Origin: Macrostomum lignano
Lineage: Eukaryota
NCBI GenBank assembly: GCA_002269645.1
Contig: NIVC01000269.1
Location: 248,001-312,000 of the forward strand
DNA length: 64,000 bases
Reading direction: 5' to 3'
Part shown: one piece after another, positions 11,383 through 58,563 of the stretch
Position numbering within the stretch: position 1 is the stretch's first letter
How the letters are laid out: each line of letters opens with the position of its first letter
Translations under genes and position numbers: made by a program
Notes under the pieces: model-generated
Databases searched by the model: none
Told to the model about the DNA's origin: nothing
What the model saw: only the letters and a program-made list of their open reading frames with translations

Positions 11383-13724
11383 ATGGCCGCAATAGAGCCA
11401 GTGGCCAGTAATGCTGTCAAGTCTGACGGCGTCGACAGCATCGAGACACTCGCCGCGGCAGCTGTCGACGATGTCAACCGTCGCCGTCAAGAAGCCCAGC
11501 GTCGTCAAGCGGAAGCAGATTTCCTTGGCGGCTCGCTGCGCGACTCCGAACGACTTCGAGCTCTGACTGTGAATTCCGGAGCGATCGGACGAGACAATCC
11601 GGCGTTCTCTAGCGAAGGAGGTACCGAGTTCGATTCTCCTCGCGAGCGTAACAGCTACATTGCCGGCGCTGTGGATGACCTTGAGGAGGACGATGTTGGC
11701 GATATTGGCGACTTTCTTAGACAGCTCCGCAGCGAAGATCCCGAAGGTTATTATGACGATGACGAGGGCAGCGGGGAGGACAGACTGGTACCCGACTGGC
11801 TGGCCCAGTTCCTCACATCGCCGCGATTCTCAGCGATCTACGGCCTGGCTAGACGAGTATCCGACGCGGTGAACGCGGCCGTGTTTGGCGACCAGGACGC
11901 TTTTCGTGGCGGCAACGCGTTGACTTGCACGGAGGCGGTGTCGTCAACTGTCTTGCCTGGTGACGACCGCGAACGAATAGAGCTGCTTCGTCTGTTGAAT
12001 GAGCCGCATCTGGTTGCGCTGATGAAGGCGCACGATGGAGCTGCGGCTTGCGCTGTGCCGTTGGAGGACCATCTGCCTGGCGTAGTTAGTGAAAGAGATT
12101 TTAGTTCTGTAATCTGAGTAGCTTGTAGCGTGCTTGGGAAGGCCTGTTGTATAGACTTTCTAGGGGAAATCGCACTTAAATTGATCTGGTCCTTCTCCTT
12201 GCCTCCTCTCCATTTCTCTTCTTATCCTCTCACCACTCTTCTCATTCCTTTCCTCTCTTCTCCCTCTCCCCTCTCCCCTCTCCCCTTCACTCTCCCCTCT
12301 CTCCTCCCCTCTCCCCTCCACTCTCCCCTCCCCCTTCACCCTCCCCCTTCCCTCTCCCTTACCTCTTTCCTCTCTCTACTCCACCCTCTGCTTTCTCCTC
12401 CCCTCTCTTCCTCTCTTCTCCCTCTCCTCTCCTGACAGGATATCGAGCCACTTAATGTTCGCTATTACACATGTATTGCTTTCTTACGTCCCCTATGAGA
12501 AATATCTCCCCCTCCAACCCTAAGCAGGAGGCCCCCAACGAGGCGGAGGCAGCAATCAAGACCAATAACTCGACATCATCATCGCCTCAAGTCTCAGATT
12601 CGCCGTCGAGTTCACCTGACGCATCTCAACGCCGCACTAATAAGCCCAAAGCTCTCGATATCGAGCTGGAAGAGTTCCAACCAAACAACCGTCTGGCAAC
12701 TTCGTCACTGCTAGCTGCAGCAAATATTCACGTGACCGTGACTGCGCCAACCCCAAGTCCTTCGGCGTCGCCCTCTGCTAGATCGGCAGCTTCAACAAGC
12801 GACGATAATAGCGCCGAGGTGCAGTCTCCTCCGGTGCCTAGGGAATCGATGCATTGTCGAACTGAAACCGTAGTGCAAGATGGTGTACAGTTTCGCAGGG
12901 TGACGCTTGTTAAATCTGATTCTCCTCTGGTGAGAGTTGATATTGATTCATACTAAATATTGGATGTGATCGATTGTTATTTGCTAGGATTGTCAAAGTT
13001 TTTTTTCAGAAATCTTTAGGCTCTTGTCAGATACAAGATTTTGTTCTTGTAAGATATCTCCAGCTTCTTGTCAGATATCTTCAGGTTGTTCTCGTCAGAT
13101 ATCTTCAGCTTTTGTCAGAGATCTTCAGGTTCTTGTCAGAGATCGTCAGGTTGTTCTTGTCAGATATCTTCAGGTTCTTATAAGAGACCTTCAGGTTGTT
13201 CTTGTCAGATATCTTCAGATTTTTGTCAGCGACAAAAGATTGTTCTTGTCAGAGAGCTTCAGTTTCTTGTCGGATCTTCAGATTATTGTCAGCGATCTTG
13301 ATGTTATTGTCAGAGACCCTGAGGTTGCTTTTTGTCAGATATCCCCAGGTTATAATGGTTATTGTAAATGATCTTCAGGAATCTCCTTGATTCTGGTCTG
13401 AAATCTCATATTTTCTTGTCAGAAAACTCATTTCATCTAGTCAGATATCCTTTAGTATAGTTTTTTTGTAGCCAAATGCTGGGCATAGATCGACTTTAAT
13501 GTTTAAACCGATTCATCCAGGGCGCCACAGTGAAAAATGTTGGCGACTCGGTCGTAGTCGGTCGCATTGTCTGCGGCGGCCTGCTTGACAGAATCGGCGA
13601 CCTCATTGGCGAGGGTGACGAGCTGATCTCGGTGAATGGCATCGACCTGACTGGGAAGCACGTTAACGAGGTGTACGACCTGCTGGTGAGCCGTTGCTCG
13701 CTTCTCCAGGGTGGAAGGATGGGC

Positions 13725-19002: not shown

Positions 19003-22000
19003 ATCTAGGCCCTGCTGCCATAGATCTAGGCCCTGCTGCCATAAATCTAGGCCCTGCTGCCATAAATCTAGGCCCTGCTGCCATAGATCTAGGCCCTGCT
19101 GCCATAGATCTAGGCCCTGCTGCCATAGATCTAGGCCCTGCTGCCATAGATCTAGACCCTGATGCTATAGATCTAGACACTTCGATTATTGAGATCTAGA
19201 CACTGATTATTGAGATCTAGACACCGATTATTGAGATCTAGACACCGATTATTTAAATCTAGACACCGATTTTAAATCTAGACACCGATTATTGAGATCT
19301 AGACACCGATTATTGAGATCTAAACACCGATTATTGAGATCTAGACACTGATTATTGAGATCTAGACACTGTTTTATTGAGATCTAGACACCGATTATTG
19401 AGATGTAGACACTGATTATTGAGATCTAGACACTTCGATTATTGAGATCTAGACATCGATTATTGATATCTAAACACCGATAATTGAGATCTAGGCACCG
19501 ATTATTGAGATCTAAACACCGATAATATAGATCTAAACACCGATAATTGAGATCTAGACACCGATTATTGAGATCTAGACACTGATTATTGAGATCTAGA
19601 CACCGATTATTGAGATCTAGACACCGATTATTGAGATCTAGACACCGATTATTGAGATCTAGACACCGATTATTGAAATCTAGACACCGATTATTGAGAT
19701 CTAGACACCGATTATTGAGATCTAAACACCGATTATTGAGATCTAGACACCGATTAATGAGATCTCGACACCGATTATTGAGATCTAGACACCGATTATT
19801 GAGATCTAGACACCGATATTTAAGATTTAGGCACCGATTATTGAGATCTAGACACCGATTACTGAGATATAGACACTGTTTTATTGAGATCTAGACACCG
19901 ATTAATGAGATCTAGACACCGATTATTGAGATCTAGACACTGTTTTATTGAGATCTAGACACCGATTATTGAGATCTAGACACCGATTATTGAGATCTAG
20001 ACACCGATTATTGAGATCTAAACACCGATATTTAAGATTTAGGCACCAATTATTGAGATCTAGACACCGATTATTGAGATCTAGACACCGATTATTGAGA
20101 TCTAGACACTGATTATTGAGATCTAGACATCGATTAATGAGATCTAGACACCGATTAATGAGATCTAGACACTGTTTTGTTGAGATCTAGACACCGATTA
20201 TTGAGATCTAGACACCGATTATTGAGATCTAGACACTGTTTTATTGAAATCTAGACACCGATTATTGAGATATAGACACCGATTATTGAGATCTAGACAC
20301 TGTTTTATTGAGATCTAGACACCGATTATTGAGATCTAGACACCGATTATTGAGATCTAGACACTGTTTTATTGAGATCTAGACACCGATTATTGAGATC
20401 TAGACACCGATTATTGAGATCTAGACACCGATTATTGAGATCTAAACACCGATATTTAAGATTTAGGCACCAATTATTGAGATCTAGACACCGATTATTG
20501 AGATCTAGACACCGATTATTGAGATCTAGACACTGATTATTGAGATCTAGACATCGATTAATGAGATCTAGACACCGATTAATGAGATCTAGACACTGTT
20601 TTATTGAGATCTAGACACTGATTATTGAGATCTAGACACCGATTATTGAGATCTAGACACCGATTATTTAAATCTAGACACCGATTATTGAGATCTAGAC
20701 ACCGATTATTGAGATCTAAACACCGATTATTGAGATCTAGACACTGATTATTGAGATCTAGACACTGTTTTATTGAGATCTAGACACCGATTATTGAGAT
20801 GTAGACACTGATTATTGAGATCTAGACACTTCGATTATTGAGATCTAGACATCGATTATTGATATCTAAACACCGATAATTGAGATCTAGGCACCGATTA
20901 TTGAGATCTAAACACCGATAATATAGATCTAAACACCGATAATTGAGATCTAGACACCGATAATTTAGATCTAGACACCGATTATTGAGATCTAGACACC
21001 GATTATTGAGATCTAAACACCGATTATTGAGATCTAGACACTGATTATTGAGATCTAGACACCGATTATTGAAATCTAGACACCGATTATTGAGATCTAG
21101 ACACCGATTATTGAGATCTAAACACCGATTATTGAGATCTAGACACTGATTATTGAAATCTAGACACTGATTATTGAGATCTAGACACCGATTATTGAGA
21201 TCTAGACACCGATATTTAAGATTTAGGCACCGATTATTGAGATCTAGACACCGATTACTGAGATATAGACACTGTTTTATTGAGATCTAGACACCGATTA
21301 ATGAGATCTAGACACCGATTATTGAGATCTAGACACTGTTTTATTGAGATCTAGACACCGATTATTGAGATCTAGACACCGATTATTGAGATCTAGACAC
21401 CGATTATTGAGATCTAAACACCGATATTTAAGATTTAGGCACCAATTATTGAGATCTAGACACCGATTATTGAGATCTAGACACCGATTATTGAGATCTA
21501 GACACTGATTATTGAGATCTAGACATCGATTAATGAGATCTAGACACCGATTAATGAGATCTAGACACTGTTTTGTTGAGATCTAGACACCGATTATTGA
21601 GATCTAGACACCGATTATTGAGATCTAGACACTGTTTTATTGAAATCTAGACACCGATTATTGAGATATAGACACCGATTATTGAGATCTAGACACTGTT
21701 TTATTGAGATCTAGACACCGATTATTGAGATCTAGACACCGATTATTGAGATCTAGACACTGATTATTGAGATCTAGACATCGATTAATGAGATCTAGAC
21801 ACCGATTAATGAGATCTAGACACTGTTTTATTGAGATCTAGACACCGATTATTGAGATCTAGACACTGATTATTGAGATCTAGACATCGATTAATGAGAT
21901 CTAGACACCGATTAATGAGATCTAGACACTGTTTTATTGAGATCTAGACACTGATTATTGAGATCTAGACACCGATTATTGAGATCTAGACACCGATTAT

Positions 22001-22680
22001 TTAAATCTAGACACCGATTATTGAGATCTAGACACCGATTATTGAGATCTAAACACCGATTATTGAGATCTAGACACTGATTATTGAGATCTAGACACTG
22101 TTTTATTGAGATCTAGACACCGATTATTGAGATGTAGACACTGATTATTGAGATCTAGACACTTCGATTATTGAGATCTAGACATCGATTATTGATATCT
22201 AAACACCGATAATTGAGATCTAGGCACCGATTATTGAGATCTAAACACCGATAATATAGATCTAAACACCGATAATTGAGATCTAGACACCGATAATTTA
22301 GATCTAGACACCGATTATTGAGATCTAGACACCGATTATTGAGATCTAAACACCGATTATTGAGATCTAGACACTGATTATTGAGATCTAGACACCGATT
22401 ATTGAAATCTAGACACCGATTATTGAGATCTAGACACCGATTATTGAGATCTAAACACCGATTATTGAGATCTAGACACTGATTATTGAAATCTAGACAC
22501 TGATTATTGAGATCTAGACACTTCGATTATTGAGATCTAGACACTTCGATTATTGAGATCTAGACATCGATTATTGATATCTAAAAACCGATAATTGAGA
22601 TCTAGGCACCGATTATTGAGATCTAAACACCTATAATATAGATCTAAACACCGATTATTGAGACCTAGACACCGATATAG
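19003..22680. repeat. Two abutting 21 bp satellites: AGATCTAGGCCCTGCTGCCAT (~19003-19170), then AGATCTAGACACCGATTATTG (~19170-22680) with higher-order structure
   Basis: Direct reading. Diagnostic variant blocks recur. Confidence 0.96.
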
Positions 22681-29262: not shown

Positions 29263-32200
29263 TCATCTTGCCAGACGCCTTCTGGCTTGGATTCGACTAC
29301 GGTTCGGCCGATTGGGCGCCGGTACCGGCTGGGCGCTGAACGGGTTGCCGGCGCTGCAATTTTTGCGAGATTAGTATGAATGAGAACAGTCACAATGCTG
29401 CTTACAGATCAGTCATAACTCTACTCCCTAGTCATTGGACATCAAGATGCTCATACAACAGTCATAGAGCTACCCACAAAACAGTCATAGAGCTACCCAC
29501 AAAACAGTCATAAAGCTACTCACAGAACAGTCATAAAGCTACTCATACAACAGTCATAAAGCTACCCACAAAACAGTCGTAAAGCTACTCATACAACAGT
29601 CATAAAGCTACCCACAAAACAGTCATAAAGCTACTCATACAACAGTCATAAAGCTACCCACAAAACAGTCGTAAAGCTACTCACAGAACAGTCATAAAGC
29701 TACTCATACAACAGTCATAATACTGCTCACAAAACAGTCATAAAGCTACCCACAAAGCAGTCATAAAGCTATCCACAAAACAGTCATCAAGCTACTCATA
29801 CAACAGTCATAAAGCTACCCACAAAACAGTCATAAAGATACTCATACAACAGTCATAAAGCTACCCAAAAACAGTCATCAAGCTACTCATACAACAGTCA
29901 TAAAGCTACTCATACAACAGTCATAAAGCTACTCACAGAAGTCATGAATCTACTCACAGAACAGTCAAATCTACCCACAAAACAGTCATCAAGCTACTCA
30001 TACAACAGCCATAAACTACTCACAACAGTCATAAAGCTAATCACAGAACAGCCATCGGTCATAAAAGCTACTCCAACTAAGCGACATGAGCACTCACGCA
30101 TCCGGTGGCAAATTTGCTGGCTGCCCAGCATGCAACAACTGCTGTGACGGTTGCTGCTGCTGCTGCGTTGCTGCAGGTCTGGCGGCGCCAAACACAAAAG
30201 TTGAAGCCGCGCCGCTTGGCTGATTGGAACCGAAAACAAAAGTTGATGGCGCCGCACTCGGTTTGGGCTCGGCATCCAAATCGACAACAGGCTGGGGAGT
30301 CTGAGCTGGCGCCAGTTTAGAGCCGAAAAGCTCAGGCGGTGGTGCGGCGGCGCCTGGCGCACTATTGGCGCCATTGGCGCCCCCAAACAGACTGGCGCCA
30401 TTTGACCCGCTTCCGGCGCCAAAGTTAAAAGCTGGCGCCGTCAGCTGCGGTGGCGCCGAAGATTCGGACAATTTTGATAGCTTATTGCTGGGCTGATCTG
30501 GCGCCGGCGCCGCTGGCGCGGAGGCGCCAAAAGCGAACGCAGCTGCAGTGGTAGCAGCGGCGGTGGCGGCTGGTCCCGCGCTAAAATTGAAGTTCATCGA
30601 AGGCTTAACCGATGTCGTAGCTGTTGAACTGTCCAGATTTAATTTTCGCTTTGAATCTCTTGACGAAGCCGGGGCAGCGGCGGTAGCGGTGAATGAAAAC
30701 AACCCGGCTGGAGCCGCAGATGCGGCGGCACCAAAAGTCGGCGCTGGCGCAGCTGTCGATGATGAAGCTACAAAACTGAGCTTTGGCCCAGCATCGCTGG
30801 ATGCTGAATTGCCAAACAATCCGAAGCCAGGCTTTGGTGCGGCATCGCTTGCGGCAGCTGACGATGAAGCAGGAGCAGTGCTTGAAGAGACAAACGACGG
30901 AGCCCTAAATCCAGTCATACCGCTTTGACCTGCTGATGGCGTACCCGACGAAATGCCAAAACCAATCTTTGGACCAGCTTCACTTGCAGCTGATGAAACT
31001 CCAAAACTGATCTTTGGTCCAGCATCACTTTGAGCTGTTGATGCAACTGATGAAGCTCCAAAGGTGATCTTCGGTCCAGCATCACTTTGAACTGTTGATG
31101 CAACTGATGAAGCTCCAAAACTTATCTTCGGTCCAGCATCACTTTGAGCTGTTGATGCAACTGATGAAGCTCCAAAACTGATCTTTGGTCCAGAATCACT
31201 CTGAGCTGTTGATGCAACTGATGAAGCTCCAAAGGTGATCTTCGGTCCAGCATCACTTTGAACTGTTGATGCAACTGATGAAGCTCCAAAGGTGATCTTC
31301 GGTCCAGCATCACTTTGAGCTGTTGATGCAACCGATGAAGCTCCAAAACTGATCTTCGGTCCAGCATCACTCTGAGCTGCTGATGCAACTGATGAAGCTC
31401 CAAAACAGATCTTCGGTCCAGCATCACTCTGAGCTGCTGATGCAACTGATGAAGCTCCAAAACTGATTTTTGGTCCAGCATCACTCTGAGCTGATAGAGC
31501 ACCTGATGAAGCTCCGAAGCTGATCTTCGGCACAGCATCACTTGCAGTTTTAGACGATGGGGCACCAAAGCTGATCTTCGGTCCAGCATCACCTGCAGTT
31601 CCAGACGATGGGGCACCAAAGCTGATCTTCGGCCCAGCATCACTTGCAGTTCCAGACGATGGGGCACCAAAGCTGATCTTCGGTCCAGCATCACTTGCAG
31701 TTCCAGACGATGGGGCACCAAAGCTGATCTTCGGCCCAGCATCACTTGCAGTTCCAGACGATGGGGCACCAAAGCTGATCTTCGGTCCAGCATCACTTGC
31801 AGTTCCAGACGATGGGGCACCAAAGCTGATCTTCGGCCCAGCATCACTTGCAGTTCCAGACGATGGGGCACCAAAGCTGATCTTCGGCCCAGCATCACTT
31901 GCAGTTCCAGACGATGGGGCACCAAAGCTGATCTTCGGCACAGCATCACTTGCAGTTCCAGACGATGGGGCACCAAAGCTGATCTTCGGCACAGCATCAC
32001 TTGCAGTTCCAGACGATGGGGCACCAAAGCTGATCTTCGGTCCAGCATCACTTGCAGTTCCAGACGATGGGGCACCAAAGCTGATCTTCGGCACAGCATC
32101 ACTGCCACTTGTCGCAGCACTGGATGGTTTTGACACTGCACCTGGCCTAGGCGACTCGCAAGCAACGCAACGACTAACAGAGACAACATTTTCAACAAGA

Positions 32201-34682
32201 CAGGTGTCGCATTGCCACTTTGACGAGGCACTGGACTGTTGCTGATGCTGCTGCTGCTGCGAGAACATTGAAAATATCGGAACAGTAGCTGGTCCACGAT
32301 CAATAAAACTTGGCCGCTTTGTCATACCGCCACTAGACTGAGCTGACGCCGGAGCTGTAACAGCACTAGACAATGGTCGTTTCTCTTGGCACACAACGCA
32401 CACCTGAGAACTAGCTGGACTGGTGCACATACAGGTATTGCAACGCCATTCACCTGTGCCTGTCTCCGCTGATGCAGTTGACGATGCCTTAGCAGCAGTC
32501 GAAGTCATAGTAGCTGTACCAGTGCTTGAAGAAGACGGCCGTTTCTCTTGGCAGACAACGCACACCTGGGAACTAGCTGGACTAGTGCACATACAGGTAT
32601 CGCATCGCCATTCTCCAGCAGCGTTCGCTGCCGCGGTGGCAGGAGCACTAACCGATGCTGCTGAAACCGCAGCAGACCCTGACAATGAAGGTCGCTTCTC
32701 CTGACAGACTACGCAAACCTGCGACGAAGCCGGACTGGTGCACATGCAGGTAGAACAGCGCCATTCTGTTGATGCAGCCGCCGAAGTTGAAGGCGCAACA
32801 GCACTGACGGCACTGGAAGCAGATAGCTGTTGCTTAGACTTCACAGCGCAACTAGTGCAAGTTTTAACTCCTGGCTGATTAGTAACCATGCAATTGAGGC
32901 ATTGCCAACCGGTGCTAGCGGAACTGCTACTAGTAGTAGCAGAAGTAGTAGTTGACGATTTTCCACGAAATATAGGCACAGAAAATTGAAATTGCATTGC
33001 TTCATCGTCTAATATCAGCGGCTGTTGCTGCTGCAGCTGGGACTGCTTCTGGCGACTATCTAACCCTGCAGTTCGATAATTATCCGAAGCGATGGAGGCC
33101 GGCGCCGGCTGCTGATGCTGACCACGTGACGGCGGCGTCCCGACGCCGCCACCAGCTTGAAATCGACGCCGATAAGCAACCCGATAAGGCGGAGCGAATA
33201 CCGCATTGGAACTACTACTATTAGTAGTAGCATTATTCTCATGATTGTTATTTAAACTTGAACCAGAGTAAGGAGTCGATGGAATACGACGAGCGTCTGT
33301 TAAAGGAGTTGATAGTCGATCCAGAGCGTCGAGAATCTTTTTGGCTGTAGGCGTCACCAAGTGTGGCTGCTGCTGCTGCTGCAAGTTGGAGAAGCTGTCC
33401 GATTGAGTCTCTAACTGTAACGGAGTGACTCTCACTGACCTACCAGGCTGAGCAGCAGCCGAATGAGCATTGAATCTACCGCCGTAACCTGTACGACCCG
33501 GATAGAATAAAGATGTTGAGGATGAAGACGGAGACGAGCCCAGCATAGCCATGGTTCTCGATCGCTTAGCCGAATTGCCCAGATTCAAGCTGAACTCATC
33601 ATCATGGTGCCGCCTCTTGCCGCGTTCCACATTGGAAGAAACTGTTGGTGATGACCACAGATGACTGTAATTGTTGTTGCTGCTAGGGCGATTTGCCGGC
33701 CCAGTCATGACGTCATCAGTGGCGGTTCCGCCTAGACCGCGGCGACGTCTTGCCTGCTGCTGAGAGGCCGACTGTTGCTGTTGAGGCGATGACTGACGGG
33801 GAGAAATACCGATTGCCGACTCTGCTGTGGAATCCGACTGTTGCTGAGGCTGCTGCTGCTGACTGGTGGCAGGCTAGACAGTGATGTGGGAAAAAACAAC
33901 AGAATTATGACGTACTGAAAAATCAAAATACAATTACTTTATTCTATACGCAGGCATACAGACGCTCACACAGGGTGTACATGTACAGCGATAACACTAA
34001 TAGACAGATGTGCAACCGACAGCTCAGCCGCAGCTATTGCGCAACGCATCTAAAGGCTGCGTACGGCTGTTCAGTCCAAGGACCGGGGGGTCGCCACACA
34101 CACACACACACACACTCAATTACCCCAGTTAATGCTGGCACCCATTCTACAGCTGGGTGAACTGAAGCAATGCAGAGTTAAGAGTGTCTTGCTCAAGGCC
34201 ACAGATTGTTCTGAGTGGGTCAGGAATCGAACCCTTGACCTTCCAGTCGTGAATCTGACGCTCTAACCACTAGGCTACAAGCCCCAAGGCTGACAACTTT
34301 AGTTTACGTGTAAAATACCTAAATAAATGGGAAACGGAATCGAGTCTTTAATAAATAAAGTTAGGGCCGCTGCACACTCCTGTGTGTGCCTGTCCAGGGG
34401 AGTCGTGTGTGACAATGTCGCTTATATTGCGTGCACATTGCTTGATTATTAGTTACTTCACGAGGTGACAAGCAGTAATGTCTTATAATTCTAATCACTA
34501 AGTAGCACACTTCAACTGTTTTCTTAATCTTCAATTATACATACCTGACCGTGATTACTATTAGTAACATGATTTCCATCGGTTTGTTCAGTAGCTGAGG
34601 CGCTGACTCCTTCGCCTCGACGGTTAGGCGTTAGAGCGTTGGATACAAACGATGGCACCAGAAAAGAGGTGAGGCGCTTCAT
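29263..34682 (-). CDS. NUP153: Nup153-like nucleoporin (RanBP2-type zinc fingers plus FG repeats)
   Basis: Predicted exons: 34688/34682-34545 (MKRLTSFLVPSFV.., donor GTATGT), 33873-30098 (donor GTGAGT, phase 2) and 29353-29263 (..RSRIQARRRLAR*, a basic C-terminus as in Nup153). Contains five W-x-C-x2-C..C-x2-C fingers, the TPTAKKILDALDRLSTPLTDARRIP motif and FVFG/FSFG repeats. An additional upstream exon is possible. Confidence 0.88.
29400..30060. repeat. 23 bp minisatellite (AACAGTCATAAAGCTAC(T/C)CA(T/C)A(C/A)) filling the last Nup153 intron
   Basis: Direct reading. Confidence 0.92.
33945..34285 (-). mobile_element. tRNA-derived SINE in a Nup153 intron
   Basis: The minus strand reads GTAGCCTAGTGGTTAGAGC (A box), GGGTTCGATTCC (B box), then GGCCTTGAGCAAGACACT (typical SINE central motif), a (GT)n run and a 3' tail. 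The anticodon stem is degenerate, so this is not a tRNA gene. Confidence 0.8.
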
Positions 34683-41600: not shown

Positions 41601-42169
41601 CCCCTTGCAGTGCAAAGGATTTTCTGAACACCCCAGAATCGTGGACGCGTCCGCATCTCTCAGTGAACCGGCTTTACAATTATAAACAGCAGCTCAGGCC
41701 TCTCCAAAACTGAAATAAAATGGATTCCACCTCAACTGCTTGCAGTTCCTCTTTAAAAAGCTAGTAGAAGAGATACCAGGTAGCAAAAAGTTTTAAAATA
41801 AATTCTTGACAAATGGCGCCATATTCAGGCATAATTGCCCTGCCCCCTCCTACTTGCTGGCTCATCACTGTCACGGGATTTTTGCAGCTGGGTCTCTTGT
41901 AGCAGCAGCTGCGGACTTTGGTATCCATGGCGATAAAGGCCCACATGAGTCGCATAGGATAGAGTAGATGCAGCAACGCAACCGCGCACGTATGAGTGCC
42001 AACCCCCCGCCAACTCCACTTCATCTCTTCATTGTCGTCTCTCTGTTGATAAAAAGATTAACGTTCCTCATGCAAATTCAAGCTGAGCTGCCCTGTGCTT
42101 GAGAAGCATCGTGAGTCTATCGGATACTTATAGTTTTCGAACAAAGCAAATTTGCTAGTAAAGACAAGC

Positions 42170-43177
42170 ATGGTACTTTGCCAGCCGCTATTTGTCTTTG
42201 TTGCGTCCGTTCTGCTCTGCACATCTACCGCTGCCGCCAACTCCGGAAATCGCTACCCGGTCATGCAGCGCACCTGCCTCAACAAGTCCCTGTCCGAGTG
42301 GACCCTCCCCAGCCCGGCCGTCTCCATTCGGCAGTGCATCTTTCTGAGTCGCCTGCAAACTCTGCCAGGCATATCAGTAGCCCAATGGAACTCACGAAAT
42401 GACACCTGTTCGCTGTTTCTCTTCAGCCGAGTCTGCCACCTGCTCAACCTGAGCAGCTCCGCTGACGGACCGTCAGACGAGGCCAACTCGTGCGAGCTCG
42501 TGGTGAACTCAGATCTTGACGTGCTCACCGCCAATCGGTACTTTGCCGCCGTGTGGCTCGGAGGCAGAGGCGAGCAGCTCGAGAACCTCGTGTGCAGCGA
42601 TGGCGGACAGAAGAATGTCATCGAGCACACCGGAGTGACTTGGACTGTCGAGGGCGCCAAGATGGACGGCCTGACATCCAGGATGTGGGTAAACGATACC
42701 ACCGGGTTCGACTTCAACAACAGCTTCACGTTTCTTATGGAGCTGAAGAGGCAGCCGAATTCGAACGCCTTCATCGAGCTCACCGACTGCAGCTCTTACA
42801 CTCACGCTTGGCTTCATTTCTGGGAATGGGACCCACTCGATTCGACTCGCAAGCTCTACATTCAAACCGGACACCGGAACTTGTTCTCCACTAACCAGGT
42901 GCTGCCAATCCGAAGCGACCAGTTCGTCCGAGTCGGCGCCACGTTCGACATTTCGATGATCATGAACAGGACCCGACTGTTCGTTGACGGTTCTTTTATT
43001 CCCGGCAACCAAGTGTCTCTCTACAACGTCAACTTTACCAGAATCGACAACTTCTGCATGAAGATCGGTTGGCGCGACCTGACTGGCTCCTACTCCAAAA
43101 TAAACGGCACTGTGAAGATGCTGGCCGTATCCAACTTCTACCTGACCGCCGACGTCATCAACCGGCTGTTCAACTGA
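42170..43177 (+). CDS. Intronless secreted protein with a Cys-containing PAN/Apple-like N-domain and a ConA/LamG-like C-domain, about 335 aa
   Basis: Long non-repetitive ORF with ATG at 42170 followed by a hydrophobic signal (MVLCQPLFVFVASVLLCTSTAAA). PAN-like segment: SIRQC..WNSRNDTCSL. LamG-like segment: GAKMDG..SFTFLMELK..FVRVGATFD..TRLFVDG..MKIGW..INGTVKMLAV..LTADVINRLF. Domain calls are by eye. Confidence 0.75.
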   Translation: MVLCQPLFVFVASVLLCTSTAAANSGNRYPVMQRTCLNKSLSEWTLPSPAVSIRQCIFLSRLQTLPGISVAQWNSRNDTCSLFLFSRVCHLLNLSSSADGPSDEANSCELVVNSDLDVLTANRYFAAVWLGGRGEQLENLVCSDGGQKNVIEHTGVTWTVEGAKMDGLTSRMWVNDTTGFDFNNSFTFLMELKRQPNSNAFIELTDCSSYTHAWLHFWEWDPLDSTRKLYIQTGHRNLFSTNQVLPIRSDQFVRVGATFDISMIMNRTRLFVDGSFIPGNQVSLYNVNFTRIDNFCMKIGWRDLTGSYSKINGTVKMLAVSNFYLTADVINRLFN

Positions 43178-43528
43178 GTGCGTGAACAGTTTTTTCAGAT
43201 AACGACGGAAGCGCTGTGACCAAATATTGCGAAGTCAAACGCAGTACATTTTGTCGCGAGATGCCTAGTTATCAAGGTTATAAGGTTAACGAAGTGTGCG
43301 TTCAAAATAGCTCGTACGAAGTTTTTTGTTTTGATTAATTATTTGATTCGGGATGTATGTAGAAGATGACACATGAATTTGAAGGAGCTATTTGTAGAAA
43401 TCAACAAGAGGATGCGATATTTGACTGTTCCCATTTTTCGATTAATTGATAAAGATAAAATGAGCATTGATGAAGCGAAGCAGTTGATTCCAAAGAGATA
43501 TCGTGATCCGTACCCCTGTGTCCCCCGG

Positions 43529-45349
43529 TGTTATGGTTTAGGATCTCCGGGGGTCCGGTCAGTTTAGGGTGTCCGGGGCGGAGACCCTAAACGGTTTAGG
43601 ATCTCCGCCCGGAGACCCTAAACCGTTTAGGATCTCCCCTGGAGACTTCTAACGGTTATGGGTCTCCGGGGTAGGAGATCTGAAACCGTTTAAGGGTCTC
43701 CGGGGCATTTTCAGGTCTCCGCACCCGGAGATCTTAAACCAGTTTCTGATCTCCCCCCAGGAGACTCTAAACCAGTTTCAGCTCTCCGTCAGGGCCGCAA
43801 AAACAAAGTCCTGGTTTAGGATCTCCGGTTTCCGATCTCCCCCCATTTGTGTAAAACCAATGGTCATGGTATTGAACGCGTACATGTATAAGAAGTGGAA
43901 AGGCATTTTTATCATCAACGTAGCATAAGTTTTATATTTATATGCTCGCACAACTGTGTATTTAAATGGAAAACTGTTTACTGTTAAAGTAATGACGTTG
44001 TCACGTTATTTGATGTTGGCTGTGACCCTTAAAAGGGCCGTTTTAGTCCCAAAATAAGTTGAAGTCAACTTAGGCGAAGTGGATGGTGTAGCGGAGCACT
44101 TGGCAATAAGGGCAGGAAACTGCCGTAGTCGTTTTATTATCAATATAAATAGTAAGTTGGTTGTTACTGGCAAATAACAACTATGGCTTTCTGGGCACTG
44201 GCGGCTGCAACAATGGTTTCTTTTTGAAGATAAATTGGATATGAGTTCAAGCGACAGACGAGTGATGTAATGGCGACGTTACGTGATGAGTAATGGCAAT
44301 GAGCACAGTGAAGGCAGTGAGACGTAGTAGGCAGGCAGATGAGCAGTGGCGAGGTTGGCGTCAGCCGTGGCGTGAGGTAAGGAGGCTCGAGGCAGCCAGA
44401 CAGAGAGAAGGAAAACAAGGCTAGGCAAGGCTAGGCAAGCCAGGCGGGACGGAGGCCAAGCAAACCAAGAAAACAAGAACACAAGTGAGGAGTGCCCGCC
44501 GCCAGGCGGGGGGGGTTTAATAAAGGAGCGCAGAGGGGGTAGCGCGAAGCACGAGCGGTTTTCATTGGCTGGCGAGAGAACTTAAAATTATCGATCGTGC
44601 CAAAATTATACGGTCGCGAGAGAGGATAGCAAAATATACAGTGAATTAGAAATTGCCACAAAATCGTTGGGCACTACTACAAGTAAACGTCGCAATAAAC
44701 AAATGGAAAAATTTAGTTGAAACGGTGAAACTGAAAGGTTGAAACTATAGAGAAACAGCAGTCCAACGGCCCTTTTGCGGGACCACTTAAACTAGCAACG
44801 TCACAACGTAAATGTCCGCTTAGTGAAAAACCGGTGATGCACTTTCAGCCGGTGCTTGGAGGAAGCATCTCTTGAGGTGTTTCCCATTGACACACCTGGT
44901 TAGTCCTCCTAGCCTGTACACGTTTTGACCAAGACACCTGGTCACGATGCAGACTTGCTGACTCCAAGTGTATCGCATCTTAGCACCCTTCCGATCGTCC
45001 CTGCGAAAATTGCGAAGCCTAACTCTGTCCCCTCGCTTCAGATCCTGAACCCCAGCTGCTCCCACGGTGTGACCAGCTCGCACCTGTCACAAGACTCGAC
45101 CACTGCCTTGGCAATCGGTGTGACGGGGATGTCAGCATAGTATCGTGCAGTAAAAAGGCTCACTGTGCTGTTGACACCCACGTGACTTCCTTGCGAGTGA
45201 AGGCTGCGGATCTTATCCCGTACCTCTTCCTCTGTGAAAAGTACTCTGCGATGGTCTTCAGGCCGCATTCGCTGACTGTCGTCCTTATTAGTCACCCTGT
45301 AGTAAAGCGGGCCGGAGACCCTAAAACGCGGAGATCCTAAACTCTAACA
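43529..45349 (-). mobile_element. Non-autonomous Ginger1 DNA transposon derivative (1821 bp), TGT..ACA TIRs, CCGG TSD
   Basis: Left end: CCGG|TGTTATGGTTTAGGATCTCCG (TSD 43525-43528). Right end: CGGAGATCCTAAACTCTAACA|CCGG (TSD 45350-45353). Subterminal GTTTAGGATCTCC repeats lie at 43530-43830. The minus strand encodes an integrase HHCC finger (LHSQGSHVG..ESCDRC) fused by deletion to a C-terminal GPY/F-like module (GDRVRLRNFRRDDRKGAKMRYTW..VYRL..VNGKHLK). The DDE core is absent. Confidence 0.88.
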
Positions 45350-46339
45350 CCGGCTGGCTCCTGACCCCCAAAATGATTGTACATTTAAATTTGCTAGCAT
45401 CCAAATTGTGACAGTCAATTGTCGTAGATCCACTCCGAGTGCATAAGGTCCGAGACTTTGAGTAAATATGACCGATTGCAGAATCTGTGTCTGCATTTGT
45501 GTCTGGGTCTTGTGAATATACGAAGTAGCTCATTTTTTTAGAGCATTGTTGTAGAGCATGTTTCATCTCGAAATGATGCTTCGGGATAGTGTGAAAATTA
45601 ACGAATACAATAGTAAAAGCAACCAACAGTAAGTTATCATTGTTGTTTAAGGTGTTTTACTTTTCCTCCTCTACAACAAAGAACCCTTTCACTCGATAGC
45701 CTGTACTTTTATTAATGAGCAACATTGCGTCACTTTATAGAAGTCTTATAGAACTTACATTGCTTCTATAACTATAGCTATTTTTTCTCTCTAAATTTTA
45801 ACCAAATTTGTTTATTTGACTGTCTTTTAAAAGCTCTTTAATAAGGTATCTTTGTGATAGTTTAATTGAACAGTACATGTATTGCTTAATTTTTTATTAT
45901 TACCTGACTGTGTTTTTCTTGTATATCTACTTATATATCTACTATCAGTAGAGCATCAAATAAAAGTTCACTATAGTTTATGCTGGGGATTTTGTTGTAT
46001 TTTAATTTATCGATTTGTCCGTTTTTATATTCGGTATTTTGTGGCGGTTCAGCCAAGTACATATAAATATAAATATACTGGAGCAGTCTCTAGCTCATTA
46101 GCTTCTCTTCTAAAACTGAAACTATACAACTGCAATACTAAGGTGCATTTATCTATTATACGAGCGTAGAAAGCTAAGAACTACAAATACATTACAATGA
46201 ATAATGTATACACTCTTCATATATTATCAAGAACATTGCGCCTAATTCAGGTTCTTTCTGGATGCAATTAGACTAAAATTACTGACTAGTACTGTCGTAC
46301 TGACCAATAACTACTTAGCAACAGCAGTAGCCAGCAGTG

Positions 46340-47239: not shown

Positions 47240-47982
47240 GCATTTTGCAGCCCATATGGGCTTACGCGCATTTAATTTAATCCAAGATACGTTTGCCAAT
47301 GTAACAGAGCTTTTGTCTATGGTAGCAAGGCTGGCGCAGCGGCATTTAATTTGGTCCAACAGGCATCCATTTGGTCCAAACACTCGTGAGCCATTGGACA
47401 AACTCTTGCCTTCTCTCAACCGTCTGCAGGTTGTTGTGCACCGCTGGAATGTCAGCGTCTCTACCAAAAATTTTCAGTTGCTTTTCCAGAGCTCTGCTGA
47501 TAGTCGAAATCTGATAACCAACTGGAGCTGTTCCCTCAACTTCTGCTGCATTTTCTGAAACGTCAACAAAGGGTTCGTCTCCACTGCATCGAGTAGCAGT
47601 TGGACCTGAGGCTCTCGAGCAACTTTCCTTGGCGATTGCCACCCTTTCGCAGGCAATCTCTGCCGGCAGAGTTTCAATGCGCTGCTGGATGCTGTAAACC
47701 ACCTTTTCTTTTACATTCAGCAACCTTGCAATGTCCTTTGGGTGTTCACCTCCGTCGAGTGCTTTGATCACAAGCCAATGACAATCGTTCAACAGCCTAG
47801 CATATGGTCCACAATTCTTGGACTGAGCTGCAAATGAACTAAATGGACCAAATTGATGCTTGTTGGACCAAATTAAATGCCGCTGTGCCAGCCTTGCTAC
47901 CATAGACAAAAGCTCCATTACTTTGACAAACGTATCTTGGATTAAATTCAATGCGCGTAAGCCCAAATGGGCTGCAAAAAGC
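47240..47982 (-). mobile_element. Internally deleted Tc1/mariner-IS630-like element with ~139 bp TIRs, flanked by TA(TA)
   Basis: 47240-47378 is the near reverse complement of 47844-47982, so both strands translate as MGLRAxNLIQDTF..HLIWSN. The interior encodes a frameshifted HTH region (DIARLLNVKEKVVYSIQQR; LLDAVETNPLLTFQKMQQKL; ISTISRAL..DIPAVHN..RRQEFVQW). No DDE core is present. Confidence 0.8.
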
Positions 47983-55428: not shown

Positions 55429-55964
55429 GCCTCGCACTAACTAAGCTGTATAGGGAGATAAGAAAAGAGGGCGAGCGAGAGAGAAGGAAGCGGAACAGAT
55501 CCGCGAGTCGCAGATCGTCCCACATCCGCAGATGTGTCCTGGATCGTTCCTATGATAGAAGCAAAAGCTTCAGCCCCAGGGAATTGAGGGGGGGGGTAGC
55601 CGGAAACGAGAAGGTAAAACTGGAATACAGTTGGAAGAGGTTAGCAAATATAGTCCAAAGGTTGTAAAAGGAAAATGCGAAAAGCAGAAAGGAATATGCA
55701 ATGTTCAGATTGGGACCTTCACCGTACACGTTTGGGGTGGGTTGGGGGGCTATAAATAGCCAGAGCCGCATCCCAAGAGGATGTGCGCAGAACACGGGCA
55801 CCCCTAGGTAGAAGCGTTGAATTGCATTGAAAAAAATCGAAATTTCATCCTCAAGGTAAGATTGATTAATTCGTTTCATAATGCCATGGTAGCTGGTATC
55901 TTTCTATCAAAGTCAAAATCCTTTTGGATTGGGCTAAGTTATTTAGACGCCGAATATTTCATAA

Positions 55965-57720
55965 TCTGTTCAGATCCCATTCACAGGTGAGTCTATTCAG
56001 ATCCCATTCACATGTGAGTCTATTCAGATCCCATTCACATTTGAATCTATTCAGATCCCATTCACATGTGAATCTATTCAGATCCCATTCACATGTGAGT
56101 CTATTCAGATCCCATTCACATGTGAGTCTATTCAGATCCCATTCACATGTGAATCTATTCTGATCCCATTCACATGTGAATCTATTCAAACACTATTCAC
56201 ATGTGAGTCTATTCAGATCCCATTCACATGTGAGTCTATTCAGATCCCATTCACATGTGAATCTATTCTGATCCTATTCACATGTGAATCTATTCAGACC
56301 CCATTCACATGTGAATCTATTCAGACCCCATTCACATGTGAATCTATTCTGATCCTATTCACATGTGAATCTATTCAGACCCCATTCACATTTGAATCTA
56401 TTCAGATCCCATTTACATGTGAGTCTATTCAGATCCCATTCACATGTGAGTCTATTCAGATCCCATTCACATGTGAGTCTATTCAGATCCCATTCACATG
56501 TGAATCTATTCAGATCCCATTCACATGTGAGTCTATTCAGATCCCATTCACATGTGAGTCTATTCAGATCCCATTCACATGTGAATCTATTCTGATCCCA
56601 TTCACATGTGAATCTATTCAAACACTATTCACATGTGAGTCTATTCAGATCCCATTCACATGTGAGTCTATTCAGATCCCATTCACATGTGAATCTATTC
56701 TGATCCTATTCACATGTGAATCTATTCAGACCCCATTCACATGTGAATCTATTCAGATCCCATTCACATGTGAGTCTATTCAGATCCCATTCACATGTGA
56801 ATCTATTCAGATCCCATTCACATGTGAATCTATTCAGACCCCATTCACATGTGAATCTATTCAGACCCCATTCATATGTGAGTCTATTCTGATCCTATTC
56901 ACATGTGAATCTATTCAGACCCCATTCACATTTGAATCTATTCAGATCCCATTTACATGTGAGTCTATTCAGATCCCATTCACATGTGAGTCTATTCAGA
57001 TCCCATTCACATGTGAGTCTATTCAGATCCCATTCACATGTGAGTCTATTCTGATCCCATTCACATGTGAGTCTATTCAGATCCCATTCACATGTGAATC
57101 TATTCAGATCCCATTCACATGTGAGTCTATTCAGATCCCATTCACATTTGAATCTATTCTGATCCCATTCGCATGTGAATCTATTCAGATCCCATTCACA
57201 TTTGAGTCTATTCATATCCCATTCACATGTGAATCTATTCAAACACTATTCACATGTGAGTCTATTCAGATCCCATTCACATGTGAGTCTATTCTGATCC
57301 CATTCACATGTGAATCTATTCAGACCCCATTCACATGTGAATCTATTCAGATCCCATTCACATGTGTGTCTATTCAGATCCCATTCACATGTGAATCTAT
57401 TCAGATCCCATTCACATGTGAATCTATTCAGACCCCATTCACATGTGAATCTATTCAGACCCCATTCATATGTGAGTCTATTCTGATCCCATTCACATGT
57501 GAATCTATTCAGACCCCATTCACATTTGAATCTATTCAGATCCCATTCACATGTGAGTCTATTCAGATCCCATTCACATGTGAGTCTATTCAGATCCCAT
57601 TCACATGTGAGTCTATTCAGATCTCATTCACATGTGAGTCTATTCTGATCCCATTCACATGTGATTCTATTCTGATCCCATTCACATGTGAATCTATTCA
57701 GCTCCTATTCACACGTGAAT
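55965..57720. repeat. 27 bp minisatellite (ATTCACATGTGA(G/A)TCTATTCAGATCCC), about 65 units
   Basis: Direct reading. Gives the 9-aa period in the RLTCEWDLN ORFs. Confidence 0.96.
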
Positions 57721-58563
57721 CCACTAAAATCCCATTCATCTTTGAATTGAATTCAAACTCTCACAGTACGGTAGCTAGGAGTGATGGAGATTGACAGGTG
57801 AATTTTGACAGTGGCTCAAAAATGCTGAGTATAAGCTAACGGAGGCAGGCAGGGCATCTATCTGCCTTTATTGTCGGTCTCTCTGTACCACCAGTCTCTA
57901 GCCCCCACCCCCTCCCCCGGTGTTGTACCTGAACTTCTCTACTATTGAATTGAAACAGCTCTCTAATACAGAAACGCGCATAGAATCTAGCTGGCATTAT
58001 AACAACAGAGAATGCTTGGAGAGGAAAGGAAGCGAGGTGGGGGTGGGGGCTGAGGGGTGGAGACGGGCCTGCCAGAATGCAAAGAGAGCTCACAGGAATA
58101 GTGGAAAGTCGTGTGCCTTACTGGCTCAGTTGGTGGTTGGTAAGGCCTTGGCCGCTTGAGTAGACTAGGGAATTGACGAAGAGAGAAAAAAGGTAAAGAC
58201 GCCCCCCCCCAGAACCAACCCCAACAGCTCTCGCCCGATCCAGTCTCGGGGGGCCACCTTCGGCTCATTCTCCGAGGGGAGGTGGGTAAGAGGGAAGGAA
58301 AGACAGCGCTGAGCCTGTTTACGAGAGAGCACTCTCGGGCCTCGCGAGGTCACGGGGACCAATCAGGGTTTAATATAGAGACCGAAGGAGGGTGTTGGTT
58401 GGTGTTTCTAGTTTGAGCAGAGGGTAGTACTCTTATTTTTACTTTCTATTATAGCGTCTTACCCGACTCAGAAAATAGGTTCTTTCTCTATGTCTCTTGC
58501 ACGGACAGAATTGTCAGCGGAATAGAACGAAGACAGCGGATTAATGCTGTCGATTGCACTGCT

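What the first reader, a model, noticed from the sequence alone, without database searches (positions are those of the whole stretch)
43525..45353. Ginger1 transposon derivative carrying a histone-style transcription unit with no histone ORF
Seen: intact ends and CCGG TSD, and an integrase lacking its DDE core. On the minus strand the ~1 kb cargo has a CCAAT box (44568-44564) and a TATA-like TTTATTAAA (44524-44516). About 470 nt downstream lies AAAACGGCCCTTTTAAGGGTCACA (stem-loop 44039-44024), which matches the replication-dependent histone mRNA 3' stem-loop with one G-U pair and is preceded by a second hairpin (TAAGTTGAAGTCAACTTA). A weaker outward-facing copy (CAACGGCCCTTTTGCGGGACCAC) lies on the plus strand at ~44764-44786. 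I cannot read a histone ORF between them. Established: this stem-loop binds SLBP and directs non-polyadenylated, S-phase-coupled processing. Inference: a mobile element that makes an SLBP-bound non-coding RNA, or one that captured a decayed divergent histone gene pair. I do not know of this being described for Ginger elements.
Basis: partly seen in the sequence, partly recalled or inferred. Interest (0 to 1): 0.7.

Follow-up and report, generated by a model that had tools for sequence, protein, structure and literature searches.

The report
Dead Ginger1 transposon with histone-like hairpin relic
This is a broken, non-autonomous Ginger1 DNA transposon, probably in a Macrostomum flatworm genome, that carries an extra non-coding 0.8-kb insert whose inverted-repeat ends include a slightly damaged copy of the histone mRNA 3' hairpin, and nothing shows that it works as a histone-style gene.

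Summary
The Ginger1 call holds: CCGG target duplication, TGTTA/TAACA termini, an array of GTTTAGGATCTCCG subterminal motifs, and a transposase reduced to its H2C2 zinc finger fused out of frame to its C-terminal module, with the DDE core gone. The best protein match is from Macrostomum lignano.

The minus-strand hairpin is not chance. It is 20/21 identical to AACGGCCCTTTTAAGGGCCAC, which I found downstream of real H2A/H2B/H3/H4 ORFs in metagenome contigs. Its one change turns the second G-C pair into G-U. It scores 26.6 bits on RF00032, below the gathering score of 34; real sites score 34.6-43.3. The plus-strand copy scores 11.4 bits (E=1.8).

No histone coding remnant or purine-rich downstream element is present, and the CCAAT/TATA pair is at chance frequency. 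Related Ginger1 elements end 260-430 bp after the transposase stop and have no such hairpin.

The two hairpins are the inner parts of ~50-nt inverted-repeat arms. These arms bound an ~817-bp insert (43994-44810) flanked by an AAT(G) direct repeat. My reading is a nested MITE-like or captured segment holding a histone 3'-end relic. No sister copies could be obtained.

The parts
43525..43528 (.). Left copy of the CCGG target-site duplication of the Ginger1 element
   Evidence: I4. CCGG is the Ginger1-specific target (PMC2836005).
43529..43845 (+). Left terminus (TGTTATGGTTTAGGATCTCCG) followed by an array of about 12 copies, in both orientations, of the subterminal motif GTTTAGGATCTCCG. These are presumed transposase-binding sites.
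   Evidence: families D1-D6, I1-I25; 31-bp period at 43579-43668.
43846..43993 (-). A/T-rich stretch of about 150 nt between the insert and the subterminal array. It is probably the element's own 3' untranslated region.
   Evidence: Inferred from the relatives, where the stop codon lies 260-430 bp from the terminus.
43991..43994 (.). AAT(G) direct repeat on the left flank of the insert. It is a candidate 3-4-bp target duplication or a junction microhomology.
   Evidence: Read directly. The evidence is weak: about a 1/64 to 1/30 chance, given the registers I tried.
43994..44810 (.). Non-coding insert of about 817 bp bounded by imperfect inverted-repeat arms of about 50 nt.
   Evidence: searches (I19; alignment A1), and (no protein or Pfam match in any frame).
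43995..44007 (-). Terminal box AACGTGACAACGT at the outer end of the left arm
   Evidence: a 12/13 match at conserved offset, reached by 12 of 20000 shuffles; these are the only two copies in the window.
44021..44044 (-). Histone-type 3' stem-loop AAAACGGCCCTTTTAAGGGTCACA. The stem spans 44039-44024 and has a G-U at base pair 2.
   Evidence: RF00032, 26.6 bits, below the gathering score of 34. (1 mismatch to the real 21-mer). (the 21-mer lies behind real histone ORFs). (fold).
44055..44072 (.). Palindromic hairpin TAAGTTGAAGTCAACTTA
   Evidence: Not significant (z=-1.6 for the 66-nt segment).
44764..44786 (+). Degenerate outward-facing relative of the stem-loop, in the right arm
   Evidence: RF00032, 11.4 bits, E=1.8. 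(non-canonical fold). (shares AACGGCCCTTTT with the left arm).
44797..44809 (+). Terminal box AACGTCACAACGT at the outer end of the right arm
44811..44814 (.). AAT(G) direct repeat on the right flank of the insert
   Evidence: Read directly.
44820..45086 (-). C-terminal (GPY/F-type) module of the integrase-like transposase, with its stop codon at 44822-44820
   Evidence: (43-53% identity to P0005, P0010, P0012 and P0014). (Hydra OTU-type Ginger1 proteins). (the relatives have H2C2 and rve upstream).
45077..45307 (-). [quoted passage not shown] It is joined out of frame to the C-terminal module at about 45080-45086, and the DDE core is deleted.
   Evidence: PF17921, 22.8 bits, E=9.8e-5. (94% identity to M. 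lignano A0A1I8IB55)..
45308..45349 (+). Right terminus: two subterminal motif copies and the end ...CTCTAACA
   Evidence: D3, I4, I14, I15, I20.
45350..45353 (.). Right copy of the CCGG target-site duplication

Best explanation
Window 43529-45349 is a coding-dead, non-autonomous Ginger1 cut-and-paste transposon. It keeps both termini and a CCGG target duplication, so it could only have moved with transposase supplied in trans. That enzyme would bind the GTTTAGGATCTCCG subterminal repeats (inferred).

The transposase gene lies on the minus strand. It has lost its start region and the whole DDE core. What remains is the YPYY/H2C2 piece fused out of frame to the C-terminal module.

Between the transposase stop codon and the left subterminal array lies an ~817-bp foreign, non-coding segment (43994-44810). 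It is bounded by ~50-nt imperfect inverted repeats and by an AAT(G) direct repeat. I read it as a small MITE-like or foldback element nested in the Ginger1 3' UTR. The alternative is filler DNA copied in during gap repair. Either way it rides along passively.

The inner part of each arm descends from a histone gene 3' end. The left arm still holds a stem-loop one transition away from a genuine histone stem-loop. The right arm has decayed.

Nothing indicates a working histone-type transcription unit, so the hairpin is best treated as a relic. The anatomy, the homologies and the scores are shown. The insertion mechanism, the histone origin of the arms and the lack of function are inferred.
For: Ginger1 identity:
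- CCGG duplication, TGTTA termini and the repeat array, set against the definition in PMC2836005.
- H2C2 remnant, 94% identical to a Macrostomum lignano protein.
- C-terminal module homologous to proteins whose loci carry H2C2 and rve upstream and end in ...TAACA|CCGG or ...TAACA|ACGG.
- Hydra OTU-type Ginger1 proteins turn up in the profile search.

The extra DNA:
- In three related elements the stop codon lies about 260-430 bp from the terminus. Here the distance is about 1290 bp.
- Removing 43994-44810 leaves 9 + 150 nt plus the 315-bp array.

Inverted-repeat arms:
- I19 and alignment A1.
- The terminal 13-nt box matches 12/13. Only 12 of 20000 shuffles reach this.
- Only two copies of the box occur in the window, exactly at the ends.

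Histone origin of the stem-loop:
- 20/21 match to a 21-mer found at 147 sites in 120 metagenome loci. At 68 of those sites an H2A/H2B/H3/H4 ORF ends within 300 nt upstream, mostly 19-60 nt.
- RF00032 E=0.0028 for the window.
- 0 of 100 shuffles give a match.

No function indicated:
- 26.6 bits against the gathering score of 34, and against 34.6-43.3 for real sites.
- All 147 real sites have C where this one has T.
- No purine run longer than 3 downstream, against 4 or more in 61 of 66 real sites.
- No histone or other protein similarity in the insert.
- The promoter motifs are at chance level.
- The relatives have no RF00032 hit at E<=10.
Against: - Only one copy is available, so it is not shown that the insert is a repeated mobile unit.
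- The AAT(G) flanking repeat is short and one register is asymmetric.
- Arm similarity falls into two blocks, the stem-loop 5' half and the terminal box, with a diverged spacer and a 3-nt indel between them. Two paralogous histone 3' ends under past constraint would look like this. Neutrally decaying terminal repeats need not.
- A G-U pair still pairs and keeps the 5'-strand G that, from my recollection of published SLBP work (not re-read here), the protein contacts. Binding is therefore not excluded.
- Some genuine histone-linked stem-loops also fell below the gathering score, for example in L093 and L094.
- The related Ginger1 elements used for the length comparison are only 40-53% identical in protein. 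The 3' region of this particular family is unknown.
Confidence: 0.55

Rival explanations
1. Captured, decayed divergent histone gene pair. A Ginger1 derivative picked up a head-to-head histone pair. Both 3' ends (stem-loop plus downstream box) survive facing outward, while both coding regions and the shared promoter decayed or were deleted.
For: - The geometry is outward-facing: the minus-strand stem-loop is on the left and the plus-strand one on the right.
- The arms share two separate conserved blocks at similar spacing. Paralogous histone 3' ends within one organism do the same, for example the four sites each in L021 and L028.
- The stem-loop matches a real histone hairpin at 20/21.
Against: - Only 724 bp separate the two stem-loops. 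That is too little for two ORFs of about 310-410 bp plus untranslated regions and a promoter.
- tblastn with H1, H2A, H2B, H3 and H4 gives only noise (best E about 41 in the interval). Pfam finds nothing at E<=10 in any frame.
- A stem-loop only 1/21 diverged should sit next to an equally well preserved ORF ending 19-60 nt upstream, as at the real sites. It does not.
- The shared downstream box is not purine-rich, unlike 92% of real sites, and it does not occur in any of the 120 histone loci.
- The homology between the arms stops exactly at the insert boundaries.
Confidence: 0.15
2. Functional histone-type 3' end. RNA made from the element, either from an internal promoter or as read-through of the dead transposase gene, which is in the same sense, is bound by SLBP at 44039-44024. 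It is then cleaved without polyadenylation, which would couple the element's RNA to S phase.
For: - The stem-loop is in the same sense as the transposase and lies near the 3' end of the internal region, about 180 nt from the subterminal array.
- It folds as the canonical 6 bp plus UUUA loop.
- It keeps the 5'-strand GG, loop U1 and U3, and the AC 3' flank (alignment).
- E=0.0028 for the window.
Against: - It scores below the RF00032 gathering score, 8-16 bits under real sites with the same 21-mer.
- It has G-U at the otherwise invariant second pair; 0 of 147 real sites have it.
- There is no purine-rich downstream element.
- The promoter motifs are at chance frequency.
- Three related Ginger1 elements have no such hairpin, and AATAAA motifs occur downstream of the stop in two of them, L122 and L124.
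- The carrier is a dead, so far single, copy.
Confidence: 0.07
3. Chance or convergent resemblance. The GC-rich palindrome is simply a subterminal protein-binding motif of the inverted-repeat arms and has no historical link to histone genes.
For: - The motif sits inside inverted-repeat arms, where short palindromes are common.
- The score is below Rfam's curated threshold.
- The finding came from a scan of many windows, so an event at E of about 0.003 per window is expected somewhere.
Against: - The 20/21 identity covers non-pairing positions too: AAC on the 5' side, the UUUA loop and CAC on the 3' side.
- By my own rescaling of the E-value to about 1.5 Gb for this one family, the expectation is about 0.008.
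- No match within 3 mismatches appears in 100 shuffles.
Confidence: 0.1
4. The ~0.95 kb is not foreign at all. It is the native 3' non-coding region of this particular Macrostomum Ginger1 family, and the inverted repeat is an internal feature.
For: - The transposase C-terminus is retained up to its natural end. Relatives stop 3-5 residues after the HLKK motif. No deletion junction is therefore required on that side.
Against: - Three relatives have only 260-430 bp between the stop codon and the terminus.
- The segment has its own terminal inverted repeats and a flanking AAT(G) repeat.
Confidence: 0.1

Closest known systems
Ginger1 DNA transposons (Bao, Kapitonov and Jurka 2010, PMC2836005), including the non-autonomous copies noted there for Ginger1-1_BF
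   Same: - CCGG 4-bp target duplication and TGTNR termini.
- Terminal and subterminal inverted repeats within the 40-270 bp range.
- Gypsy-integrase-like transposase with a YPYY-type motif, an H2C2 finger and a GPY/F-type C-terminal module.
- Like Ginger1-1_BF, and like the relatives L121-L124, the protein ends without an OTU or Ulp1 domain.
   Different: - The DDE core and the N-terminus are deleted and the frame is broken.
- The left repeat array (315 bp) is much longer than the right one (about 40 bp).
- The 3' UTR holds an ~817-bp inverted-repeat-bounded insert.
- The host is probably a flatworm, which is not among the species listed in the 2010 paper.
Replication-dependent histone mRNA 3' stem-loop (Rfam RF00032) with U7/HDE-dependent processing
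   Same: - A 6-bp stem beginning GG, a 4-nt UUUA loop, an A-rich 5' flank and an AC 3' flank.
- 20/21 identity to a variant that sits behind real histone ORFs.
   Different: - G-U at pair 2, and 26.6 bits against a gathering score of 34.
- No histone ORF upstream and no purine-rich downstream element.
- It is located inside a transposon.
Gene-fragment-carrying DNA transposons (Pack-MULE / Pack-TYPE transduplication) and filler DNA in deletion derivatives. This comparison is from my own knowledge, not tested here.
   Same: A non-autonomous cut-and-paste element whose interior holds DNA unrelated to the transposase. That DNA is possibly copied from a host locus during gap repair.
   Different: - No recognisable host exon or gene fragment is present. 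Only a ~50-nt histone-3'-flank-like piece is, and it occurs twice in inverted orientation.
- Capture is not demonstrated.
Nested MITE / foldback insertions
   Same: Short and non-coding, with terminal inverted repeats at the exact ends, a short flanking direct repeat, and a position inside another transposon.
   Different: - Copy number is unknown.
- The arms are only about 72% alike.
- The flanking repeat is 3-4 bp and not diagnostic of a superfamily.

Membership tests
Ginger1 superfamily | 4-bp target-site duplication, CCGG or CCGT/ACGG | tested here: met
   CCGG at 43525-43528 and 45350-45353. Definition taken from PMC2836005.
Ginger1 superfamily | Termini 5'-TGTNR ... YNACA-3' | tested here: met
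   TGTTA at 43529-43533 and TAACA at 45345-45349. The relatives L122-L124 have the same TGTTA termini.
Ginger1 superfamily | Terminal inverted repeats of about 40-270 bp | tested here: met
   The 21-nt ends are 19/21 complementary, and GTTTAGGATCTCCG motifs occur on both sides. The left array is about 315 bp and the right about 40 bp, so the element is asymmetric.
Ginger1 superfamily | Gypsy-integrase-like transposase: YPYY motif and H2C2 zinc finger | tested here: met
   LYYRV plus H..H..C..C. PF17921 at 22.8 bits, E=9.8e-5, just under Pfam's cut-off of 25.5. 94% identity to M. lignano A0A1I8IB55.
Ginger1 superfamily | DDE catalytic core (rve) | tested here: not met
   The core is absent. The zinc finger's last Cys (about 45080) abuts the C-terminal module, which starts at about 45086 in another frame. 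The relatives do have rve. The element is therefore a non-autonomous derivative and not an autonomous member.
Ginger1 superfamily | GPY/F-type C-terminal module | tested here: inconclusive
   The 88-aa piece aligns at 43-53% identity with C-terminal modules of integrase-like proteins and with Hydra OTU-type Ginger1 proteins. There is no Pfam model hit, and the GPY/F tripeptide itself is not conserved (SQQVCIV).
Histone 3' UTR stem-loop (RF00032) | Covariance-model score at or above the gathering score (34 bits) | tested here: not met
   26.6 bits for 43999-44044 on the minus strand and 11.4 bits for 44763-44809 on the plus strand. Real sites with the same 21-mer score 34.6-43.3.
Histone 3' UTR stem-loop (RF00032) | 6-bp stem with two G-C pairs at the base and a 4-nt loop with U at positions 1 and 3 | tested here: inconclusive
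   The shape and the loop are met. The second pair is G-U, whereas all 147 real sites sampled have G-C.
Histone 3' UTR stem-loop (RF00032) | Lies a few tens of nt downstream of a histone ORF | tested here: not met
   There is no histone similarity anywhere in the window and no Pfam or protein hit in the insert. Real sites have a median of 32 nt from the end of the ORF hit.
Histone 3' UTR stem-loop (RF00032) | Purine-rich histone downstream element for U7 snRNA | tested here: not met
   The longest purine run in the 30 nt downstream is 3, against 4 or more in 61 of 66 histone-linked sites. The host's U7 sequence is unknown, so a lineage-specific element is not excluded.
Histone 3' UTR stem-loop (RF00032) | SLBP binding and cleavage without polyadenylation | not testable with these tools
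   This needs RNA 3'-end data or a binding assay.
Nested MITE-like element | Terminal inverted repeats at the exact ends | tested here: met
   [G/T]ACGTTGT[C/G]ACGTT at 43994-44007 and 44797-44810. The arms are about 50 nt.
Nested MITE-like element | Target-site duplication | tested here: inconclusive
   AAT(G) at 43991-43994 and 44811-44814. The repeat is short and compatible with chance.
Nested MITE-like element | Multiple copies in the genome | not testable with these tools
   There is no second copy in the window. No Macrostomum genome is held in the searchable collections.

The most novel reading that the evidence does not exclude
A DNA transposon lineage in flatworms has taken over the histone mRNA 3'-end machinery. 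Element RNAs in the transposase sense end at an SLBP-bound stem-loop instead of a poly(A) tail. This would tie their abundance to S phase in the neoblasts, where cut-and-paste transposition followed by sister-chromatid repair raises copy number. The inverted-repeat unit would be a mobile cassette that delivers this signal.
Probability: 0.05. Interest if true: 0.75.

Novelty: new member of a known kind. Interest (0 to 1): 0.25.

Why it matters
As it stands, this is an ordinary dead non-autonomous transposon with a passenger segment. It is useful mainly as an annotated example of Ginger1 in a probable Macrostomum genome, and of how a near-consensus histone hairpin can occur away from any histone gene.

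It would matter only if sister copies conserve the hairpin and transcripts end there. That would be the first transposon shown to use the cell-cycle-coupled histone 3'-end pathway. The stem-cell-rich flatworm, with its published neoblast transcriptomes, would make this directly testable.

Tried and rejected
- **Histone remnants.** tblastn of H1, H2A, H2B, H3 and H4 against the whole window (word size 2, E<=100) gave only noise.
- **Cargo reading frames.** Ten six-frame stretches of the cargo, joined into one query, found no match among 5.8 billion proteins. The same stretches had no Pfam match at E<=10. A decayed histone, OTU or Ulp1 domain, or any captured exon, is therefore not detectable.
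- **Sister copies.**
  - Self-BLAST of the element within the window finds only itself.
  - The one Macrostomum protein hit (P0001) has no contig on record.
- **Spurious protein hits.** The HMMER search with the 88-aa C-terminal piece gave top hits to huge PKD-repeat proteins, with many weak stretches summed. I rejected these. Only the short hits at 43-53% identity are real relatives.
- **Promoter motifs.** The CCAAT/TATA pair was rejected as evidence, because 22 comparable pairs occur in the window.
- **Stem-loop as the native 3' end of Ginger1 transposase mRNA.** Rejected as a general feature. Three relatives lack any RF00032 hit at E<=10 and end 260-430 bp after the stop.
- **Literature.**
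  - I found no paper on histone stem-loops in transposons.
  - I found nothing on Macrostomum histone 3' ends.
  - The 'Ginger' hit I opened, in the M. lignano genome paper, was the author name Gingeras; I did not open the other nine hits.
Full report
**What is in the sequence**

- The element 43525-45353 is flanked by CCGG on both sides and ends in TGTTA...TAACA.
- The terminal 25 nt, counting the duplication, are 92% complementary (I4).
- Inside the left end, 43534-43845 is an array of about a dozen copies, in both orientations, of GTTTAGGATCTCCG. The right end has two copies at 45313-45342.
- A self-BLAST finds no second copy of any part of the element in the 64-kb window.

**Ginger1 identity and the state of the transposase**

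Bao et al. define Ginger1 by several features (PMC2836005):
- CCGG or CCGT target duplications and TGTNR termini.
- Terminal inverted repeats of 40-270 bp.
- A Gypsy-integrase-like transposase with a YPYY motif, an H2C2 finger, a DDE core and a GPY/F motif.

On the minus strand, the right terminus runs directly into ...LYYRVTNKDD...H-x4-H...C-x2-C. This piece hits Pfam Integrase_H2C2 at 22.8 bits, E=9.8e-5. It is 94% identical to part of Macrostomum lignano protein A0A1I8IB55. That was the only hit among 5.8 billion proteins, so the window is probably from M. lignano or a close relative. The very high density of minisatellites (82 TRF rows) fits that genome, where simple and tandem repeats make up 15% (PMC5730564).

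Immediately after the CxxC the frame breaks. A second frame (45086-44823) encodes an 88-residue piece.
- A full HMMER scan of 1.84 billion cluster representatives matched it at 43-53% identity to short proteins P0005, P0010, P0012 and P0014.
- P0010 shows the end of an integrase core (AYN..H..TG.TPF) followed by this module.
- A profile search added Hydra vulgaris proteins with an OTU domain. OTU is the C-terminal domain listed for many Hydra Ginger1 elements.
- The genomic loci of the relatives (L121-L124) carry H2C2 and rve upstream and end in ...TAACA|CCGG or ...TAACA|ACGG.

The top hits, which were to PKD-repeat giants, are artefacts of summed weak repeats.

**The stem-loop**

Rfam at gathering thresholds finds nothing in the window. 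With E-value thresholds, RF00032 matches 43999-44044 on the minus strand at 26.6 bits against a gathering score of 34.
- E is 1e-4 in the 2.3-kb search and 0.0028 for the whole window, where it is the best hit of any family.
- By my own rescaling of the value, E for this one family over about 1.5 Gb would be about 0.008.

To learn whether the sequence is a real histone hairpin variant, I scanned public metagenome contigs for AACGGCCCTTTTMAGGGYCAC.
- At 68 of those sites an H2A, H2B, H3 or H4 ORF ends within 300 nt upstream, mostly 19-60 nt. Several contigs are evidently histone clusters with 2-4 sites.
- Every one of the 147 sites has C at the Y position. The window has T.

So the window's hairpin is 20/21 identical to a genuine histone stem-loop (one mismatch, and no match within three mismatches in 100 shuffles). 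Its single change converts the second G-C pair into G-U. Genuine sites with this 21-mer score 34.6-43.3 bits, although a few histone-linked sites also fell below the gathering score. The hairpin folds as 6 bp plus UUUA at -8.8 kcal/mol, z=-3.

My conclusion is that the resemblance is not chance and most likely reflects descent from a histone 3' end.

**The rest of the proposed transcription unit**

- The plus-strand copy scores 11.4 bits, E=1.8, even when only 91 nt are searched. It folds non-canonically.
- CCAAT followed by an A/T run is found 22 times in the window.
- The 30 nt downstream of either hairpin have no purine run longer than 3. Of 66 histone-linked sites, 61 have a run of 4 or more.
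- Histone proteins find nothing in the window.
- The cargo's reading frames match no protein and no Pfam family at E<=10.

The two hairpins are arms of an inverted repeat (I19). When aligned, the arms share two blocks:
- AACGGCCCTTTT.
- AACGT[G/C]ACAACGT, 11-15 nt further out.

The second block is a 12/13 match at conserved offset. Only 12 of 20000 shuffles and 104 of 20000 random window pairs reach this. The box occurs nowhere else in the window and in none of the 120 histone loci.

These boxes are the outermost homologous bases. Just outside them lies AAT(G) on both sides, at 43991-43994 and 44811-44814. The unit 43994-44810 therefore looks like a small inverted-repeat-bounded insertion.

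Comparison with relatives supports this. In L122, L123 and L124 the transposase stop codon is only about 285, 262 and 430 bp from the element terminus. In the window it is about 1290 bp away. Removing the unit leaves 9 + 150 nt of A/T-rich UTR plus the 315-bp repeat array. None of the relatives has an RF00032 hit at E<=10.

**Interpretation**

The best-supported reading (confidence about 0.55) is as follows.
- The element is a dead, trans-mobilisable Ginger1 derivative.
- Its 3' UTR received an ~0.8-kb non-coding unit bounded by inverted repeats. This is either a nested MITE-like element or gap-repair filler.
- The unit's arms contain a histone-3'-flank-derived piece, well preserved in one arm and decayed in the other.
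- Nothing indicates function.

The rivals are these.
- A captured and decayed divergent histone pair (about 0.15). The outward geometry and the two-block conservation favour it. The 724-bp spacing, the total absence of coding remnants next to an almost intact hairpin, and the non-purine box count against it.
- A functional SLBP-dependent 3' end for element RNA (about 0.07).
- The segment being the family's native UTR (about 0.1).
- Pure coincidence (about 0.1).

**Limits**

No Macrostomum genome is reachable with these tools. The decisive tests could therefore not be run: copy census, empty sites, native histone 3' flanks, U7, and RNA 3' ends. They are listed as next steps.

I found no literature on histone stem-loops in transposons.

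Noticed in passing
window 1-64000 (for example 19148-22676, 55963-57738, 4090-5095, 6237-7048): The window is packed with minisatellite arrays: 82 TRF rows, with units of 16-57 bp and up to 167 copies. This fits the tandem-repeat-rich Macrostomum lignano genome (15% simple and tandem repeats, PMC5730564).
   Followed up: partly
window 30094-33708 (-): A 1204-aa open reading frame with a RanBP2-type zinc finger (PF00641, 29.7 bits) and internal 51/57-nt tandem repeats (30985-32103). It is probably a real host gene exon with a repetitive domain.
   Followed up: partly
window 11383-12117 (+): A 244-aa ORF with an L27 domain (PF02828, 27.8 bits, above the cut-off of 22). It may be an exon of a MAGUK/Lin-7-type scaffold gene.
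   Followed up: no
window 47346-47966 (-): A 206-aa ORF with weak helix-turn-helix matches (HTH_29 at 20.8 bits, HTH_23), 2 kb to the right of the Ginger1 element. It may be the N-terminus of another transposase.
   Followed up: no
window 42152-43177 (+): A 341-aa ORF directly upstream of the element, with a hydrophobic, signal-peptide-like start and no Pfam family.
   Followed up: no
L121-L124 (marine metagenome, Logan and JGI contigs): Related Ginger1 elements whose transposase ends 3-5 residues after the C-terminal HLKK motif. There are only 260-430 bp to the TGTTA terminus, so there is no room for the OTU or Ulp1 domain reported for almost all Ginger1 transposases. This may be a 'short' Ginger1 subgroup like Ginger1-1_BF.
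   Followed up: partly
L095 (about 2177-2300, minus strand); also L070, L091, L103: One metagenome contig carries a head-to-tail array of at least five histone stem-loop units with a 24-nt period (AACGGCCCTTTTCAGGGCCACCTA). Three other contigs have two stem-loops in tandem. Histone hairpins can therefore multiply locally without an ORF between them.
   Followed up: no
P0001 (M. lignano A0A1I8IB55, named 'Conserved plasma membrane protein'): This database gene model is chimeric. Residues of about 80-135 are the N-terminal YPYY/H2C2 part of a Ginger1 transposase from a sister copy, spliced to unrelated repetitive sequence.
   Followed up: partly
L021, L028, L111 (metagenome histone clusters): Within one organism, all four core-histone 3' ends share three things: the stem-loop, a purine-rich box (CAAAAAGAATCT), and a further box (TTGTTGTACAT) about 27 nt downstream. 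That is a third conserved element beyond the classical downstream element.
   Followed up: no
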